Shown here one piece after another: positions 23,872 through 33,711 of a stretch of DNA of 64,000 nucleotides. Source of the stretch: Guillardia theta CCMP2712 (Eukaryota > Protista > Cryptophyta); contig NW_005434648.1 in the NCBI RefSeq assembly GCF_000315625.1, forward strand, positions 472,974 to 536,973, read 5' to 3'. Both the position numbers and the translations under genes were made by a program. The stretch's first letter is position 1. Each line of letters begins with the position of its first letter. The notes under the pieces were generated by a model. It was not told where the DNA came from, searched no databases, and saw only the letters and a program-made list of their open reading frames with translations.

Positions 23872-26514
<2,643 letters not shown>

Positions 26515-27128
26515 CCAACCGGCCAAACCCAAAAGGTCCCTGGGGCGACAGCAGCACTGCCGCACATGATGGGGTAGGGGTAGAACTCGGCAAATACAGA
26601 CCCTTAACAATCACCAGATCAGGTACTGAAAAACAGGGGTGAAAAATCATGAAGGTCACTTTCATGGGGTGGGCAGTATCACCCCCTGGTACAAAAGCAG
26701 TATTTTAGGGCAAGGGGTCAGTGCTAACTAGTAGTAACATGAGGGGAGCAACGTATCGCAGGAGATACTTCCGTCAGGTGACTTTCGTGCTCGGAGGTTC
26801 CGACAAGTTCCGGCCCGGAGCCTCCGGCGGCCCGTTTGGTACCTCAGGGCCATTTGACTGAGTGAGTCAGATGGGCAGTTGGAAGGCTAAAAAAACATCA
26901 AATTTGAGAGGTGGCATCCGGGAAGCCGAGAACTCCGACTGGGAATCATGGCATTTTACTCAAAGTTAAGTTAAATTGTACTAGGGAAGACTACCAGGGT
27001 GTGTGTCTTTCATAAAGGGGGAGGGGTACCAGCCGATAGTCGTAGTCTTCGTGAGGAGGAACGAGGGAGTTCGCAGGCCCTGAGAGCAGCAGCAGCAGCA
27101 GCAGCAGCAGCGCTGAGCAGCAAACATC

Positions 27129-30100
27129 ATGTCATCCCGCGCAGCGAGTCAAACGCTTCCCGCTAGTATCCCGCAGAGTATAGAATCGGTAGGGAAGGCA
27201 CGGGTTGCGAGCTGGGTGGGATCGGGACTAGGAACGGAGTCTTCGCTCTCCCAGAGGATCAAACACTTTGACAAGAGTTCCAATGGCAGCTTCGAGGACG
27301 ACCTGAGGCTCGCTGACTGCGGACAACAGATCCGGAGCGGTCACTTAGAGAAGAAGATAGCAGGCACTGTAGTGACGTGGATAACCCAAGGGGTGGTGCT
27401 AACGAATACGAAGATCTGCTTTCTTATCGACGAAGGTGAGATCAATGAGGATCAGAGCGTTATCGACTACATTCCTCTGCATGAAGTCAAGCAGCTGATT
27501 GTCGAGGGTGAAAACAAACTTGAGACAGACAAGAAGCTTTGTCTTGTCATCCGCACAGTAGAAGGAGGGTACAACTCCGGGCGCACGTATGTTTACCGGA
27601 TGAAGACAGAGGGAGAGTGCTTGTCTTGGCATGCAGACATCTCAAAAGCGTTTGAGCAAGCCTTGAAGAACAGCAAGAAGCATTCTGAGAGGAAGGCGAT
27701 TGGAGGCAGCAAATTCAACTGGCTGCGGTTCAAGGCTGGGAAAGTTATCAACGCTGGCATGACAAAATCAGGTAAGGGGGAAGGGGAAGGGAATAAAAGC
27801 GCTCATGATGCTCTTGCAGTGATTTCCTTGCTGATTCTCCTGAACTTCACTGTGGACATCCTGGAAGCTGAACGCCTCCCGAATCCCTCTTCCAACATTG
27901 GAACCTTCATTCATGCAGCGAGGATACTTATCATCGCCTCCTTCACCGTCGAAGTTTTCGTATCAGCCTTCGCGTTATCGGAGGGTCATTTCAAGCTCTT
28001 CTACTCGAACCCCTGGAACCTAATGGACCTTATAGTCGTCCTCGTCTCTCTTGCCGTGATCTACTTCGATACGCACCCGCAGCTGAAAGTCCTCGGGCTC
28101 GTGCGGAATTTCAGGTGCGAGCAGAGGAGAGAGCAGAGGACGTGTGGAAGCTGATGACGACTTGGCTCAGGCTAGCGATTGTGTTCCGACAAGTCAAGAG
28201 CTTGAACAGGATCATGACAGCGCTAGGAAGGGCCGTGGTTCCTCTTCTCAACGCTTTCATCCTCCTGCTGCTCGTTTCTTGCTTCTATGCCATCTTGGGG
28301 ACACACTTGTTCAAGAATTTTGATGAGAACTTCTTCGGGTCTTTCAGCGCATCGCTCTTGTAAGGAAGCTTTTGTCTGCAAACTTTGATGGAGGGTAGGA
28401 GTTCAGGAGAAGAAACGAGAGATGGGAGGGGGGCGTTGACGCAGGAATTGAGAGTCTTATGTTCAAGGGAAAGAATTGGGTAGAAAGCCGGAGGAGATGA
28501 GGAGTGAAAGACGATTGCACTTCGCCAGGGAAAGAAAGATGTACACGGACCAGTGAATGGATGTTGAGGGAGGGAGGGAGGGAGGGAGGGAGGGAGGGAG
28601 GGAGTGGGAGCAAGGAGGGAGCTATGACTGACTGACTGTGTCTTGCTTGCTCGATGGCTGCGACGTGATGGATTGGTTGATGACTACGGCGTTCTAGCAC
28701 ATGTAAGTGTAGAGGAAAAGAGCAGGAGCAGGAGACTGATTGAGAGGCAGTGTTTCAGATGATGACGGGGGACTCGTGGGCGAGTTCAGTCACGAGGACG
28801 CTGTTCGATGAGGTGGGGCCGGACAATGAGCTGCGAGGAAACTTGAACCGACGAGTGGCCCTGTTCTCGGTCTCCTATGTGATGATCGCGACCATAGTCC
28901 TGGTGAACATCGTGGTGGCTGTGCTGTTGGACGAGTTCATAGCCTCGGTGACAAGGGAGAAGGAAGAGCACGAGAAGCAGCTCAAGCAGCAGAAGGAAGT
29001 GGAAGCGAAGGCGTCAAGGATCTCCGGGGTGCTGGATCCTTTGCTCCTGACTATCTCGTCCTTCAACGATAGTTTGGACCTTTCCAAGCGCATCTCGCAA
29101 ATGTACAACTCCCTTGATGCTGACGGGTGAAGAGGAGGAAGAAGTGATGGAGACAGGAGGAGCTGAATAGTTTGCAGAGGGGGGACTGTGAGCTTCAACG
29201 AGTTCAACCACGGGCTGAAGCAGCTGCAGCTGCCGACTCCGATCCATATCACTCTTGACGACTACGACGTCATCACGGAGGGAGGGAGGCTCTGCAATGC
29301 CAAGGGAGAGTTTGACGCCGACCACTTCCAGGCTATGTGAGGCGGTGGAGGGACGGAGGGACGGAGGAAGGCAGGAGGAAGGCAGGAAGAGAAGGAATGA
29401 CGTCTTGCTCTAGGATCAAGGGCGAGTTGAAACGATACGCACAACGATGCGCGGCAAACACTATGTCGGAAACAGAGAGGCAAGAGTAAGTCAGAGCAAG
29501 AGGATTGAGTTGGGGTTGAGTGAGAGGAGGATGGAGAAGGAGGAGGGGTGAGAGGTGAGGTGCTGAACGTTGTGGGGCAGGGAACATTCCATCCTGTTCA
29601 TTCTGAAGCTCCTAACGATGACCGTCGAGGAGATTCATGCGGGGATGAAGCACTTGGAAGACCAGCAGGCGGCATTGAGGCGAGTAGGCGAGGAGCTGAA
29701 AGCGAGCAGAAGAGAGCAGAACATTCAACACATGGAGGTTTGCGAACTGCTACAGCAGGTGATACAGAAGATGGGGTTTGAGGCGTCGAGACAGCAGTTG
29801 TCGAGCACGTCAGGCCCTGTGAGCTATCCTCCTCGCTCCTCCTCGCTCCTCCTCGCTCCTCCTCGCTCCTCCTCTCCCCCCCTCGCTTCCACTGCCCCAC
29901 TTGAACTCACTCGTTCGTCCGCAGAGCAAGAGAGAGGTGACTCCTGCCACGGTGCGTTAGGGAGCCAGCAGCACGTCCAGCTGACCGTTTGACAGGCGGT
30001 AAGGCTGCCAGAAGTCCAGCTGACAGACTCCAGAGAGGTCGAGAGCCGCTCCGATCAGGTACCGCGAGGAGGCAGGGAGTGAAGGAGCTGATCCCCTTCA

Positions 30101-30548
30101 GAACCTCTACAGCAACGTGTGCTTCCCTCCTACCCCGAGGATGAGCAGCAATGAGAGAGCGAGAGCGAAGGGGCGGGGGAGCGAGCGAGTCCCCCCGGCC
30201 TCCAGCGTTTCTGTAAACGACTGTAAGGGTCAGGTCCTAACCTTGAAGATCGCAAACCCCAGGAAGCTCCCGAGGGCCCAGCCGTCGCTTCTTCAAGCAG
30301 AGAAAACAGAGGAGCAGCTGCACTTTAGCCAGGGCAGCGAGAGAGAGCGAGACGAGAGGTCGAAGACAGAGAGGGTCGCTCAGCTGACGCTGCACAACGG
30401 CAGCAAGGAGGGGAGAACATCGCGTTCGCGGTTGGCGGCGGAGTTCCTGCTGGTGAGTCAGCAAGGAAGAGACGAGGCCGCCAAGGTGAAGGGCAGGCGT
30501 TCAGGTCAGAGCCAAGTCAAACTGCCTCACTTGTCCTCCGCCGAGTAA
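27129..30548 (+). CDS. Single-domain (1x6TM) voltage-gated Na/Ca-type channel (EukCat-like) with N-terminal PH domain and C-terminal EF-hand and coiled coil
   Basis: PH: IRSGHLEKK...WITQGVVLTNTKICF...IDYIPLHEV...GRTYVYRMKTEGECLSW. S3: NPWNLMDLIVV. S4: KVLGLVRNFRLAIVFRQVKSL. S5: FILLLLVSCFYAILGTHLF. Pore: SLFTLFQMMTGDSWAS. S6: VLVNIVVAVLLDEF. EF loop: DADGGGTVSFNE. Confidence 0.88.
28698..28702 (+). other. 5-nt micro-exon (CACAT) in the channel pore helix
   Basis: Flanked by ttctAG and GTAAGT; restores the frame to give ASL-F-T-L-FQMMTGDSW. Confidence 0.8.
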
Positions 30549-31166
30549 GAGTCTGATATGTAGTTCAGTAGTGAACACCTAACAGTGACTGCTGCTATCC
30601 CCGGGTCGGGGGTTACTAGTTAGACCGAAAGGCCGCGTGACTCTGAGATTCCTGGCCCGAACTGACGAAAAGTAACTTTTCCTTGGTTTTTCCTGGGCGA
30701 AAGCCAACAGCCTCGGAAGTTTTTAAACCGTTGAACAGTAATGCGGCCCGGTTCAGGGCCCGGCCCGGGGGCCGGTTCTGTGCCGGTTCTGCCAGTGACT
30801 GAATCGGGATCAGGGGAGGGACGAGGGGCCGTGGTCATGAGGAGGGATGAGGGATATGGGGTTAAGGATGAGGTTTTTTATGGGAGTGAGGGCGTTGGAG
30901 ACGGAGAGTATGCAGAAGAGCGAGGGAGAGGACAAGAAGAAGAGCGAGGGAGAGGACAAGGAGAAGAGGGAGGGAGCAAGCGAGTCAACGAGGGATGGAG
31001 GGTGGACCCTGGGATCGACTGCAGGAAAGTGTCTCACATGTCCATGTACTGACAAAGGCTGTGGTACAGGTTATGTAGAGTGATGGCGAGCGTTTCATAC
31101 AGTTGAAGGATGCAGAAGTGTGATAGTTCTGGATAATATCCATGAGACAACTTTGAATCATACTGG

Positions 31167-33711
31167 ATGCCAAAATCATTGTTGTCCATGCTTCTTTTCC
31201 TCTTGCTGTGTGCATCAATGCCCACCAAATCGGAGTTTGCTGCAGACCAAGCATTGCAGGGTCGGTTGCATGGCCGAAGGTTGTTACAGTACTTTGGGAT
31301 CTCAAGTTTCGACATGAGAGAATCGCGACTGGTGGTGTCTGGTGGTTGCCTTCTCGACCTTGCCACGAGCATGAACAGAGCGTGCGCATTGATCACCGAG
31401 ACGGTTCCCTACTACTACATAGATCCTACGACGAGGACAATCCAAGTGAACCAAACTCTCACCACCAGTGATGTACGATGGGTGTGCTGGGGCGCGGCAT
31501 ACACCAACCCCTTCCCGAACATTGACATCTCTCTGTACTCGGACTTCTCAGTCGGCTATGGATTCAAGACCATGGTCACGTCCTGTGGTGTTGAGATCGG
31601 GACGAATTTCCTCGCTTGCTTCGGTGCCAACGATCCAAGCGTGTCCTCGACAGGAGCCAAGATCGGAGGTCAGGCCGATCCTCCTGCTGGGAAGTTCTCG
31701 CAAGTTAGTGTGGGAGGGCTGCATGCTTGTGCCATCACCAACTTTGCGGACACGGCAACATCCTACCGCTCGAATCTTGTTTGCTGGGGGAACAACAGGT
31801 CAGAGATGGAGCGAGTGGTGTTGACTTTGTGGATGATGATGGCTGTGTTGACAGGATGGGACAAACAACGGTTCCTGCTATTGTGCAGGTTTCCATTCTT
31901 ACAACCATCAACTACACGTACGTTCAGGTTGGACCTCGTCGTCTTGTTCCTCATGTTTGGTTGATGTCTGTGCACCAGTTGGGATACGAATACTCCTGCG
32001 CCCTCAGGAGTGACAACCGGTTGACTTGCTTCGGGTCAGACCTGGACCAATCCCTTGACATGCCGGATCGTGTGCTTGTACGTCAAACGTGCGACTCTGA
32101 ACTCTGAGTGACGAGGAGGAACTGGCAGGCCACCAACACGAAGAACGGAGGGTACATGTCGTCGGTGAGCATGAGGAGCGGACAAGAGGGATTATCGCGA
32201 TCATTTCGTTGTTCTTCCAGGGCTCTTCATATGGCTGCTGTCATGATTGCTCGCAGTGCGACTGCTCTACGGTCTCCCACGCGGGTGCGAGCGGGCAACG
32301 TCAGCTCGCCGAGGGTTGACTGTCATACAGGTGTAGGGGCAAGGTGTTTGGAGCAGCAGCGGATCTCTGTCACCTGGTACCACACGTGTGCGATTCGGGC
32401 AGGTTGCGATGTGCAGGTGATTTGAGGAGGAGGAGGAGGAGGAGGTAGATGACACAGCCTCCAGTGCCAGGGCAAGAACCCAAAATGTACCTCAGGGAGT
32501 TTGAGCACCTGGTGGGCATCATGTCGTGTATTGATTTGTATTTGATCTCACCTTGCAGGTACGCCAAAGACACAAGCTGCTTCTGCAACTCTTGTGTCAG
32601 ACCGCATGAAATGGAGGTGATTCGATCCCACGTGCTGCTCTCTTGTGAGGTTTCTCAGTGCTGGGGATACAACGCATGGGGAAACGCAAACGCGCCTCCT
32701 GGAAAGTTCAAAGTGGTATGTACTCCTCCATCCTCTTTCCGCGCGATCAGGTTGAGGGTGCCGGAACAGGTCAAAGCTGACGTGGACTTCACCTGCGCCA
32801 TCTATGCTGAGTGCAACAACAAGTAATGAGGCTGGTCCCTCATGCCTGCCTAACTCGCTGGCAGAGATGTTCTCGACGTCGTTGTGCCAGGGACGGGAAA
32901 GTCTCAGTGCCAGCTCGCAAACAACATTGTGTGCTTTGGCAGGTGCGAAAGAGACGAGGGAGAGGGAGAGGGAGAGGGAGAGGGAGAGGGAGAGGGAGAG
33001 GGAGAGGGAGAGGGAGAGGGAGAGGGAGAGGGAGAGGGAGAGGAGGGAGAGGGAGGAGGTGGAAGGAGGAAACGAAGGGGAANNNNNNNNNNNNNNNNNN
33101 NNNNNNNNNNNNNNNNNNNNNNNNNNNNNNNNNNNNNNNNNNNNNNNNNNNNNNNNNNNNNNNNNNNNNNNNNNNNNNNNNNGGGAGAGGGAGAGGTGAA
33201 GGAGAAACAAGGGGAAGGGAGTCCGAGGAAAGGGAGAGTGCTCATTGCGAAGGTGAGGGGGCTGATAAAACAGTAGAAACAATCAGGGCCAAGTGAGTCC
33301 TCCCTCCGACATGTGCAACGGAGCCGCCCAGGCAAGTATGGAAGTGAAGGATGTTGGCAGTGACGATGAAAACCAGGCGAGACTCGAGGCAGAGGCAAGA
33401 CTCAACAACACAATCTTCGCTACTCCTGCTCCTCCCACTCCGAGGTGTCCTATCACTCTTCCTGCCTTGCTCCTTCTCCCCACCTCTCCCCTTCCAAACT
33501 TGTCCTCTCCTCCTCCCTTCCTGTAGCTCATCCGTGTCGCAGGCCCGCGTGCATCTGTACTCCGCAAGGGTGTGACTGTCTTGGGGAGTACCCGAGACTT
33601 CAGTTCGAGTCTGCATGTCGCCCTCGCTGCCATCTCCTCCTCTCCCTCCTCGTCTGTGGTGAGCATATGAAGCTTCAAGTCGCTCCTCCTAACCAGATGT
33701 GTGGGGACTAG
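31167..33711 (+). CDS. Secreted RCC1/BLIP-II-like (crinkly-repeat) beta-propeller protein with Cys-rich segments
   Basis: Signal MLLFLLLCASMPT; repeats GQADPPAGKFSQVSVGGLHACAI, LVCWGNN, YEYSCALRSDNRLTCFG, ISVTWYHTCAI, QCWGYNAWGNANAPPGKFK; spans an assembly gap. Confidence 0.7.
32956..33045 (+). repeat. (GAGAGG)n intronic microsatellite next to the gap
   Basis: Tandem hexamer run. Confidence 0.9.
33083..33182. other. Assembly gap (100 N)
   Basis: Run of n. Confidence 1.

What the first reader, a model, noticed from the sequence alone, without database searches (positions are those of the whole stretch)
27129..30548. PH-domain / single-domain voltage-gated channel / EF-hand fusion with a half-neutralised S4
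Seen: one gene encoding PH + 6TM pore (filter TGDSW) + canonical EF-hand + coiled coil. Against the usual LRxLRxFRxFRLF pattern, S4 reads LGLVRNFRLAIVF, so two of four gating arginines appear replaced (by G and I). Known: single-domain EukCat channels of algae resemble bacterial Nav channels, and PH domains often bind phosphoinositides. Inference: a channel gated by lipid and Ca2+ rather than mainly by voltage, with an Asp filter possibly favouring Ca2+. I do not know of this architecture being characterised.
Basis: partly seen in the sequence, partly recalled or inferred. Interest (0 to 1): 0.85.

Follow-up and report, generated by a model that had tools for sequence, protein, structure and literature searches.

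The report
PH-domain-fused single-domain voltage-gated cation channel
This Guillardia theta gene really does encode a bacterial-type voltage-gated channel with a PH domain at the front and an EF-hand tail; it belongs to a large cryptophyte family of this design that I could not find described in print, and this copy has lost two normally conserved voltage-sensor arginines.

Summary
Window 27129-29992 (+) is one 8-exon gene of Guillardia theta CCMP2712, truncated in GenBank as GUITHDRAFT_106856. It encodes a PH domain (AlphaFold pLDDT about 96; Foldseek hits to GRK2, ArhGAP9, Btk and Akt PH domains), S1-S6 with filter TGDSW, a post-S6 helix, an EF-hand-like domain and a heptad-rich helix.

The channel part is nearest to the haptophyte EukCatB/NavEh channels, already known as ion-transport domain + coiled coil + EF-hand pair. 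The PH fusion is the new element. It occurs at about 18-20 loci in this genome and in Hanusia, Hemiselmis, Geminigera and Cryptomonas, but not in the 122 haptophyte-type relatives scanned with a family PH profile. No paper found mentions it.

The S4 claim is correct. Gly at R1 and Ile at R4 are nearly unique among 189 relatives (R1 basic in 185, R4 in 185) and are shared only with four close paralogs. S4 still keeps three Arg and two Lys in register.

"Lipid-gated rather than voltage-gated" is not supported: this PH lacks both beta2 basic residues of the canonical phosphoinositide motif. Ca2+ permeability is plausible, because the published EhEUKCATB1 E305D mutant (TGDSW) conducts Ca2+.

No RNA reads covered the gene. 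The scan's first readers had already noted PH-channel paralogs elsewhere in this genome.

The parts
27129..27771 (+). Exon 1: disordered N-terminal tail (aa 1-57), PH domain, pre-S1 helix
   Evidence: ORF from the ATG. Sequence conservation with the orthologous ENA contig begins at this ATG. Pfam PH hit.
27324..27701 (+). PH domain (aa about 66-191): seven strands plus a C-terminal helix carrying the invariant Trp
   Evidence: AF2 pLDDT about 96 with the PH strand/helix order. Foldseek probability 1.0 to GRK2, ArhGAP9, Btk, TAPP1 and Akt PH domains. The family profile hits PLEKHA6/7 PH at E=3e-9. dN/dS is 0.20.
27772..27819 (+). Intron 1 (48 nt, in frame, GT-AG)
   Evidence: The orthologous ENA contig differs here by a net -2 nt, so the segment must be spliced out. 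The JGI model removes it. The alignment to paralog P0179 is gapless only when it is spliced.
27820..28114 (+). Exon 2: S1, S2, S3 and the first half of S4
   Evidence: Pfam Ion_trans positions 7-101; alignment to homologs.
28083..28114 (+). S4 first half, LKVLGLVRNF(R). The Gly codon at 28095-28097 sits at the R1 position.
   Evidence: R1 is Arg/Lys in 185 of 189 relatives and Gly only here and in P0179.
28115..28170 (+). Intron 2 (56 nt), which splits S4
   Evidence: GT-AG boundaries. 11 of 56 columns differ from the ENA orthologue, while the flanking exons are nearly identical.
28171..28359 (+). Exon 3: S4 second half (LAIVFRQVK; the Ile codon at 28178-28180 sits at the R4 position), S4-S5 linker, S5
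   Evidence: Pfam Ion_trans positions 108-154.
28698..28702 (+). Exon 4: 5-nt micro-exon CACAT, which restores the frame and gives SLFTLFQMM
   Evidence: Context is ag|cacat|gtaagt. The product matches the homolog consensus SLFTMFQVV. Paralogs on contig C292 have CACAA in the same layout.
28751..29126 (+). Exon 5: pore helix, filter TGDSW (28765-28779), S6, post-S6 helix, first third of the EF loop
   Evidence: Pfam Ion_trans positions 181-233; 70% identity to P0179.
29178..29336 (+). Exon 6: rest of EF loop 1 (full loop DADGGGTVSFNE = 29116-29126 + 29178-29202) and the second, non-canonical EF-like half
   Evidence: Aligns to the region that scores as Pfam EF-hand_1 in 27 of 36 homologs.
29414..29485 (+). 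Exon 7: IKGELKRYAQRCAANTMSETERQ
   Evidence: tblastn match to P0187 and P0011; alignment.
29581..29992 (+). Exon 8: heptad-rich helix (LFILKLLTMTVEEIHAGMKHLEDQQAALRR...) and a low-complexity tail ending at TGA 29990-29992. The true 3' end is not verified.
   Evidence: Homology to P0179 runs to about 29701. Heptad heuristic. Decamer repeat at 29827-29887.

Best explanation
Window 27129-29992 (+) is an intact, selectively constrained gene of Guillardia theta. It encodes one subunit of a homotetrameric or heterotetrameric, BacNav-like single-domain voltage-gated cation channel of the EukCatB/NavEh lineage.

Shown:
- The architecture is a disordered N-tail, a PH domain, a pre-S1 helix, S1-S4, S5-pore-S6 with filter TGDSWAS, a post-S6 helix, an EF-hand-like domain and a heptad-rich helix.
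- PH fusion to this channel type defines a clade found in cryptophytes and in unnamed metagenome sequences. It has about 18-20 loci in this genome.
- The window copy and four close paralogs (contigs C166 and C292) form a long-branched subclade. It has lost S4 R1 (Gly) and R4 (Ile/Leu), the beta2 Arg of the PH domain (Gln) and the Ser at EF-loop position 5 (Gly).

Inferred:
- The channel still senses voltage, because R2, R3, R5 and two in-register Lys remain and the S2/S3 counter-charges are kept. It should carry less gating charge, so I expect a shallower and/or shifted activation curve.
- The single Asp ring makes it Ca2+-permeable or poorly selective rather than Na+-selective.
- The EF-hand-like tail gives Ca2+ feedback, as proposed for EhEUKCATB1.
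- The PH domain acts as a membrane-proximal docking or regulatory module. Its ligand is unknown and is probably not bound through the canonical phosphoinositide pocket in this copy.
For: **Gene and organism**
- Exact exon matches to GUITHDRAFT_106856 / XP_005834393.1.
- The eight-exon GT-AG model gives 716 aa with no stop.
- Against a 97%-identical genomic orthologue from a metagenome, exons are 2.7% diverged and introns 12-21%. dN/dS is 0.39 overall and 0.20 in the PH domain. S4 is identical.

**Domains**
- Pfam PH and Ion_trans lie in one ORF.
- AF2 and Foldseek give a PH fold.
- 13 of 36 homologs hit Pfam PH, 36 of 36 hit Ion_trans and 27 of 36 hit EF-hand_1.

**Transcript linkage in relatives**
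- MMETSP/EukProt transcript-derived proteins of Hanusia phi, Hemiselmis andersenii and others carry PH, channel and EF-hand in single ORFs.

**Family**
- 35 matches in the window's own genome, about 18-20 loci with PH plus channel.
- In the tree, one branch with 100% support separates all PH-bearing sequences from 40 haptophyte-type sequences without PH. The window and P0179 share a stem of 0.69.
- The best single-domain solved structure is NavEh 7x5v (E about 5e-19), ahead of the BacNavs at about 1e-12.

**S4 statistics:**

**Filter**
- EhEUKCATB1 E305D (TGDSWSE) conducts Ca2+ and Ba2+, and this channel has an EF-hand pair and Ca2+-dependent currents.
- NavEh has five S4 charges and an EF-like domain.
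Against: - No RNA read covered the gene in the runs laid, although the neighbouring gene was well covered. Expression and the exact splice pattern, including the 5-nt micro-exon and the 3' end, are therefore not confirmed for this locus.
- Nothing functional was measured.
- The window's filter tail is AS, not the SE of the tested E305D mutant, so the selectivity inference is indirect.
- The nearest paralog's EF-hand is below the Pfam threshold.
- The tree has no BacNav, EukCatA, EukCatC or CatSper outgroups, so placement inside EukCatB is not formally tested.
- Simultaneous weakening of the S4, PH and EF motifs could mean relaxed or changed function.
Confidence: 0.72

Rival explanations
1. Loss of S4 charges has turned this subclade into a channel opened mainly by phosphoinositide binding to the PH domain and by Ca2+ binding to the EF-hand, with little voltage dependence.
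For: - R1 and R4 are replaced, and this is nearly unique in the family.
- The PH fold sits directly before S1.
- The PH beta1 Lys pair and the nearly invariant NSGR in the beta6-beta7 loop, at the usual ligand end of a PH domain, are retained.
- EhEUKCATB1 currents depend on Ca2+.
Against: - Three Arg and two Lys remain in register, and the S2 and S3 counter-charges are kept.
- This copy lacks both beta2 basic residues of the canonical K-Xn-(K/R)-X-R motif, whereas most relatives keep the Arg. If any members are lipid-sensing, this subclade is the least likely.
- EF-loop position 5 is Gly, and the nearest paralog's EF-hand is below the Pfam threshold.
Confidence: 0.15
2. The subclade encodes modulatory ("silent") subunits. 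These would co-assemble with canonical-S4 paralogs into heterotetramers, as in CatSper or the KvS subunits, and tune gating. Alternatively, Gly at R1 could open a gating-pore (omega) leak through the voltage sensor.
For: - There are many co-resident paralogs with a conserved pore and tail.
- The subclade has a long stem branch with coordinated motif changes but clear purifying selection.
- From general knowledge: small residues at R1 or R2 cause omega currents in Nav1.4 and Cav1.1 disease mutants, and CatSper subunits differ in S4 charge number.
Against: There is no assembly or co-expression evidence. This is purely analogy.
Confidence: 0.1
3. The locus is a decaying or unexpressed duplicate, and the unusual S4, PH and EF residues reflect relaxed constraint.
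For: - There was no RNA coverage.
- Motifs are weakened in three domains at once.
- The Hanusia transcript of this subclade (P0003) is frame-disrupted.
Against: - The frame is intact across eight exons.
- Every splice site in the part the orthologous contig covers (introns 1-2 and the intron 3 donor) is kept there, and dN/dS is well below 1.
- The same substitutions are kept in paralogs that are only 60-70% identical.
Confidence: 0.05

Closest known systems
EhEUKCATB1 / NavEh (Emiliania huxleyi single-domain Nav; PDB 7x5v; Helliwell et al. 2020 preprint; PMC9114117)
   Same: - A single 6TM voltage-gated subunit.
- A T-G-[E/D]-S-W filter.
- Five-position S4 register.
[quoted passage not shown]
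- NavEh is the best single-domain solved-structure match, and the haptophyte relatives are the nearest non-PH clade in the tree.
   Different: - It has no PH domain; a 13-residue N-helix ball gives N-type inactivation instead.
- Its filter carries Glu (Na+-selective) rather than Asp.
- All five S4 charges are present.
- It has a long extracellular S5-P1 loop.
Guillardia theta paralogs GUITHDRAFT_120042, _105198 and _100126, and their Hanusia phi homologs
   Same: The same PH + 6TM (TGDSW) + EF-hand architecture. GUITHDRAFT_120042 also shares Gly at R1, a hydrophobic residue at R4, Gln in PH strand beta2 and Gly at EF-loop position 5.
   Different: - GUITHDRAFT_105198 and _100126 and the Hanusia homologs have basic residues at all five S4 positions (one Lys at R4 in _100126) and EF-hands above the Pfam threshold where tested (_105198, Hanusia P0011); _100126 and most Hanusia homologs also keep the W-x-x-R motif, which _105198 lacks.
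- _105198 and the Hanusia P0011 type also carry a second C-terminal EF-hand pair.
- They exist only as automatic annotations ("PH domain-containing", "EF-hand domain-containing", "Calmodulin").
Bacterial single-domain Nav channels (NaChBac, NavAb) and their Ca2+-selective mutants
   Same: Homotetrameric 6TM design, an x-[E/D]-S-W filter, and a C-terminal helical neck and coiled coil.
   Different: They are prokaryotic and have no PH or EF-hand domain, four S4 arginines and a Glu filter. They are only about 1e-11 to 1e-12 matches.
CatSper subunits
   Same: Single-domain eukaryotic subunits with a T-x-D-x-W type Asp filter, and with reduced, unequal S4 charge among subunits.
   Different: They are an animal sperm-specific heterotetramer with no PH or EF-hand fusion. 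The published trees place EukCats apart from CatSper (PMC6509283). This was not tested here.
PH domains of PLEKHA6/7, TAPP1, cytohesin/Grp1 and Akt
   Same: The same fold. The beta1 Lys and the C-helix Trp align.
   Different: Those domains bind phosphoinositides through (K/R)-x-R on strand beta2. The window has I-x-Q there.

Membership tests
Voltage-gated ion channel superfamily (Pfam Ion_trans PF00520), single-domain 6TM | S1-S6 matching Ion_trans above the gathering score | tested here: met
   Three exon pieces score 34.1, 30.0 and 24.3 bits and cover profile positions 7-233 of 241. Nearest paralog P0179, whose annotated model is mis-spliced in the S5/pore-loop region, scores 84 bits.
Voltage-gated ion channel superfamily (Pfam Ion_trans PF00520), single-domain 6TM | S4 with basic residues at every third position, and acidic/aromatic counter-residues in S2 and S3 | tested here: met
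   In register: K, G, R, R, I, R, K. That is 3 Arg and 2 Lys, with R1 and R4 missing. The S2 Glu and Phe and the S3 Asp are kept.
EukCatB / NavEh clade | Phylogenetic placement with haptophyte, pelagophyte and cryptophyte single-domain channels, apart from EukCatA, EukCatC, BacNav and CatSper | tested here: inconclusive
   The nearest non-PH relatives are haptophyte TGESW channels. NavEh is the best single-domain PDB hit. The published clade B includes cryptophytes and the G. theta genome was surveyed. No outgroups were available, and the papers' sequence lists are not held.
EukCatB / NavEh clade | Glu at filter position 0 (TGESWSE), conserved in coccolithophore members and required for Na+ selectivity | tested here: not met
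   The window has TGDSWAS. Asp, mostly within TGD[S/G/N]W, is general in the PH-bearing clade.
EukCatB / NavEh clade | [quoted passage not shown] | tested here: met
   The window aligns without gaps to the EF region of homologs. Where that C-terminal region was scanned on its own, P0187 and P0011 hit Pfam EF-hand_1 (33 and 42 bits), while the nearest paralog scores only 15 bits; 27 of 36 whole homologs hit EF-hand_1.
EukCatB / NavEh clade | N-terminal hydrophobic helix plus Arg cluster acting as an inactivation ball (NavEh) | tested here: not met
   Residues 1-57 are predicted disordered (pLDDT below 50) and have no Arg cluster.
PH domain (PF00169) | Profile match at or above the gathering score | tested here: met
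   25.2 bits against a cut-off of 25.1, so marginal. 13 of 36 homologs hit at E<=0.01, best 3e-8. The family profile hits PLEKHA6 PH at E=3e-9.
PH domain (PF00169) | Seven-stranded beta sandwich capped by a C-terminal helix with a conserved Trp | tested here: met
   AF2 gives strands 67-157 and helix 161-191 at pLDDT about 96. Foldseek probability is 1.0 and TM up to 0.76 to solved PH domains. W167 is invariant.
Phosphoinositide-binding PH subclass | Canonical beta1-beta2 motif K-Xn-(K/R)-X-R | tested here: not met
   The beta1 Lys pair is present (LEKK), but strand beta2 reads W-I-T-Q where PLEKHA7 has W-K-R-R and most relatives have W-x-x-R.
Canonical EF-hand Ca2+-binding loop | 12-residue loop with oxygen ligands at positions 1, 3, 5, 9 and 12 and Gly at position 6 | tested here: inconclusive
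   In DADGGGTVSFNE, positions D1, D3, G6, V8, S9 and E12 fit, but position 5 is Gly. Pfam could not be run on the spliced window peptide. The nearest paralog is below threshold.

The most novel reading that the evidence does not exclude
Cryptophytes have built a voltage-gated channel with its own PH-domain sensor, a combination I could not find described for any voltage-gated channel. In the window's subclade, the loss of S4 R1 and R4 would have shifted control away from voltage. The channel would then be either a lipid-, protein- or Ca2+-tuned Ca2+ entry channel, or a modulatory subunit (or gating-pore leak) that reshapes the excitability underlying cryptophyte photobehaviour.
Probability: 0.2. 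Interest if true: 0.85.

Novelty: new variant of a known kind. Interest (0 to 1): 0.6.

Why it matters
EukCatB/NavEh channels are the only eukaryotic relatives of bacterial sodium channels with known physiology and structure. This finding shows a large sister radiation with three features:

- Every member carries an N-terminal PH domain.
- The filter is the Asp form, which a published mutagenesis experiment showed converts a Na+ channel into a Ca2+-permeable one.
- One subclade naturally lacks two of the five gating arginines.

This gives ready-made natural variants for asking how S4 charge number, an attached PH module and an EF-hand tail shape gating in a simple homotetrameric channel. Guillardia theta is also the source of widely used channelrhodopsins. 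These roughly 20 channels are obvious candidates for the voltage-gated Ca2+ entry step downstream of its photoreceptor currents.

The public gene model for this locus is truncated, so its pore, filter and EF-hand are invisible in the databases.

Tried and rejected
- **RNA evidence.** One raw RNA run and two probable RNA contig sets were laid on 26400-31300. No reads or joints fell on the gene, although the neighbouring gene was covered. Splice junctions are therefore unverified here.
- **Joining the S5 exon to the pore exon without a micro-exon.** No GT-AG pair keeps the frame. A GC donor at 28349 would delete conserved residues. I rejected both in favour of the 5-nt micro-exon, which restores the homolog consensus and is conserved in paralogs.
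- **The extra G after 28296 seen in one 2011 DNA-run contig.** It would create a stop inside conserved S5. I treat it as a homopolymer error of that run.
- **The JGI model.** Its removal of GHFKLFYSNPWNLMDLI is wrong, because that is conserved S2-S3. Its 48-nt first intron I accept.
- **Extension of the gene to 30548.** There is no homology beyond about 29700 and a stop at 29992.
- **The papers' supplementary sequence lists.** They are not held, so I could not confirm which G. theta proteins were called EukCatB.
- **Pfam on the window's spliced EF region, and a fold of the full spliced protein.** These were not done, because the spliced sequence has no reference and I did not type it.
- **A complex prediction.** None was run, because no binding claim is made.
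Full report
**What is in the sequence**

The window is nuclear DNA of Guillardia theta CCMP2712. Its genome copy here is 87.1 Mb in 669 contigs, and the exon translations are identical to GUITHDRAFT_106856 / XP_005834393.1.

From the ATG at 27129, one open frame carries a Pfam PH hit (aa 68-174, 25.2 bits against a cut-off of 25.1). It is followed by Ion_trans S1-S4 (34 bits). Downstream pieces carry the rest of Ion_trans: S4b-S5 at 30 bits, and pore-S6 at 24 bits.

**Gene model**

Reading the DNA against full-length homologs gives eight exons with only GT-AG introns:

| Exon | Coordinates |
|---|---|
| 1 | 27129-27771 |
| 2 | 27820-28114 |
| 3 | 28171-28359 |
| 4 | 28698-28702 |
| 5 | 28751-29126 |
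| 6 | 29178-29336 |
| 7 | 29414-29485 |
| 8 | 29581-29992 |

The product is 716 aa with no internal stop.

The S5 exon ends in phase 2 and the pore exon begins in phase 1. Only a 5-nt micro-exon (ag|CACAT|gtaagt, 28698-28702) closes the frame. It produces SLFTLFQMMTGDSW, matching the family consensus SLFTMFQVVTGDSW. Paralogs on contig C292 have CACAA in the same layout. This agrees with a separate first-reader note on the same window.

The GenBank model (359 aa) stops at exactly this point. It therefore lacks the pore, the filter and the EF-hand.

**Independent support for the model and for function**

A 1430-nt metagenome contig (L031) is a genomic orthologue.
- Exons differ at 2.7% of sites, and introns at 12-21%.
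- The first intron differs by a net -2 nt, so it must be spliced out.
- Upstream of the ATG the sequences diverge with indels.
- dN/dS is 0.39 overall and 0.20 in the PH domain.
- S4 is identical, including the Gly and the Ile.

RNA evidence for this locus could not be obtained. The one raw RNA run and two probable RNA contig sets gave no reads on the gene, while the neighbouring gene from 31068 onward was well covered.

Linkage of PH and channel on one mRNA is shown only for homologs. Transcript-derived proteins of Hanusia phi, Hemiselmis andersenii and other MMETSP cryptophytes carry PH, channel and EF-hands in single ORFs.

**PH domain**

AlphaFold2, run with a 36-sequence alignment, gives pLDDT about 96 for residues 60-190. 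It predicts seven strands and a long C-terminal helix, then a pre-S1 helix and S1-S4.

Foldseek returns only PH domains at the top (GRK2, ArhGAP9, Btk, TAPP1, Akt; probability 1.0, TM up to 0.76). A profile of the family's PH region finds PLEKHA6/7, TAPP1, cytohesin, pleckstrin and Akt PH domains, with a best E-value of 3e-9.

In those alignments the canonical phosphoinositide motif maps as follows:
- The beta1 Lys is present (LEKK).
- On strand beta2, W+1 and W+3 are Ile and Gln in the window.
- Most relatives keep Arg at W+3.

A family-specific, nearly invariant G-x-N-S-G-R-x-Y in the beta6-beta7 loop is retained. The fold is therefore certain, while canonical lipid binding is not indicated for this copy.

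**Channel and its relatives**

The best single-domain solved structure is NavEh of Emiliania huxleyi (7x5v, E about 5e-19). It scores ahead of the bacterial Nav channels at about 1e-12.

NavEh/EhEUKCATB1 is published as N-helix + S1-S6 + EF-hand-like domain. It has five S4 charges and the filter TGESWSE, and its currents depend on external Ca2+. Its E305D mutant (TGDSWSE) becomes permeable to Ca2+ and Ba2+.

The window's filter is TGDSWAS, so a Ca2+-permeable or poorly selective pore is a reasonable inference. It is indirect, because the two residues after Trp differ.

Helliwell et al. state that EukCatB includes cryptophytes and that they surveyed the G. theta genome. Neither paper mentions a PH domain. 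Full-text searches for EukCat plus pleckstrin, and for pleckstrin homology plus voltage-gated plus Guillardia, found nothing relevant.

**The family**

- The PH-plus-S1-S4 query matches 35 places in the window's own genome. About 18-20 loci have both PH and channel motifs.
- In the 1.84-billion-protein representative library there are 190 hits, and many span both domains.
- All named sources are cryptophytes: Guillardia, Hanusia, Geminigera, Cryptomonas and Hemiselmis. The rest are metagenomic.
- None of the 120 listed haptophyte-type relatives carries Pfam PH in its precomputed annotation. None of the 122 full-core sequences of that type matched the family PH profile.
- In a maximum-likelihood tree of 78 channel cores, one branch with 100% support separates 40 haptophyte-type sequences from all 36 PH-bearing ones. 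Two apparent fragments fall on the PH side. This is compatible with a single gain or a single loss; there is no outgroup, so the direction is unknown.
- The window and GUITHDRAFT_120042 sit on a long stem (0.69), nested among the Guillardia and Hanusia members.

**S4 and the other sensors**

The family S4 reads L-R-L-x-R-x-F-R-V-x-R-x-F-R-K-x-K. The window reads L-G-L-V-R-N-F-R-L-A-I-V-F-R-Q-V-K.

Among 189 sequences with a complete core, R1 is basic in 185, and Gly occurs only in the window and P0179. R4 is basic in 185, with Ile and Leu only in these two and Pro in two others. The same state is found in four paralogous loci on contigs C166 and C292 and in the metagenome orthologue.

R2, R3, R5 and two flanking in-register Lys remain. 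The S2 Glu and Phe and the S3 Asp also remain.

The same subclade also changed the PH beta2 Arg to Gln and EF-loop position 5 from Ser to Gly. The nearest paralog's EF-hand scores 15 bits against a threshold of 25.4, whereas canonical paralogs score 33-42 bits.

The window's loop DADGGGTVSFNE still has D1, D3, G6, V8, S9 and E12.

**Interpretation**

- The architecture claim is right and is far beyond chance.
- The most likely function is a depolarisation-activated, Ca2+-permeable cation channel of the EukCatB/NavEh type. Its gating charge is reduced in this subclade. It has a Ca2+-feedback tail and a PH module of unknown ligand.
This particular copy has the weakest PH and EF motifs of the family and keeps a usable S4.
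- Alternatives are a modulatory subunit or a gating-pore leak (by analogy only), or a decaying duplicate. The last is argued against by the intact frame, the conserved splice sites and the low dN/dS.

**Limits**

- There is no expression or splice evidence at this locus.
- The 3' end is unverified. Homology ends near 29700 and the frame stops at 29992; the stretch to 30548 is unsupported.
- The coiled coil rests only on a crude heptad score.
- The tree has no outgroups.
- Pfam and structure prediction could not be run on the full spliced protein, because it has no reference.
- The scan's first readers had already noted several PH-channel paralogs elsewhere in this genome. Those notes are unchecked, but they agree with my own locus count.

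Noticed in passing
window 28698-28702 (and L003, L004 on G000 contig C292): A 5-nt micro-exon (CACAT; CACAA in the paralogs) sits between the S5 exon and the pore exon and is conserved in this subclade. Other paralogs have either one ordinary intron at SLFT|MFQ or no intron there. Several seem to place MFQVVTGD on a small exon that the public models miss.
   Followed up: partly
window 27129-28363: The public model GUITHDRAFT_106856 (359 aa) is truncated at the micro-exon. It also wrongly splices out the conserved S2-S3 segment GHFKLFYSNPWNLMDLI. In the databases the locus therefore appears only as a "PH domain-containing protein".
   Followed up: yes
window 28296: One contig of a 2011 DNA run carries an extra G in a run of four G. 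This would put a stop inside S5. It looks like a homopolymer error of that run rather than an error in the window.
   Followed up: partly
window 29827-29887: The decamer TCCTCCTCGC occurs six times inside the C-terminal coding tail. Depth in the DNA run is very high there, so the motif is repeated elsewhere in the genome.
   Followed up: no
window 27085-27122 and 28566-28604: An (AGC)13 run lies immediately upstream of the start codon, and a (GAGG)10 run lies inside the long third intron.
   Followed up: no
window 31068-31300 and beyond: The downstream neighbour gene is covered at high depth by 2.4-kb contigs in two probable RNA data sets, in contrast with the silent channel gene.
   Followed up: no
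L031 (ENA ERZ930071 contig, 1430 nt): An environmental metagenome holds a 97%-identical genomic orthologue of the first three exons. A close Guillardia relative therefore occurs in that sample.
   Followed up: partly
G000 C166:88-110 kb and C292:1-8 kb: Four close paralogs of the window gene lie as two pairs on two small contigs. These may be a tandem or segmental duplication, or alternative haplotype contigs.
   Followed up: no
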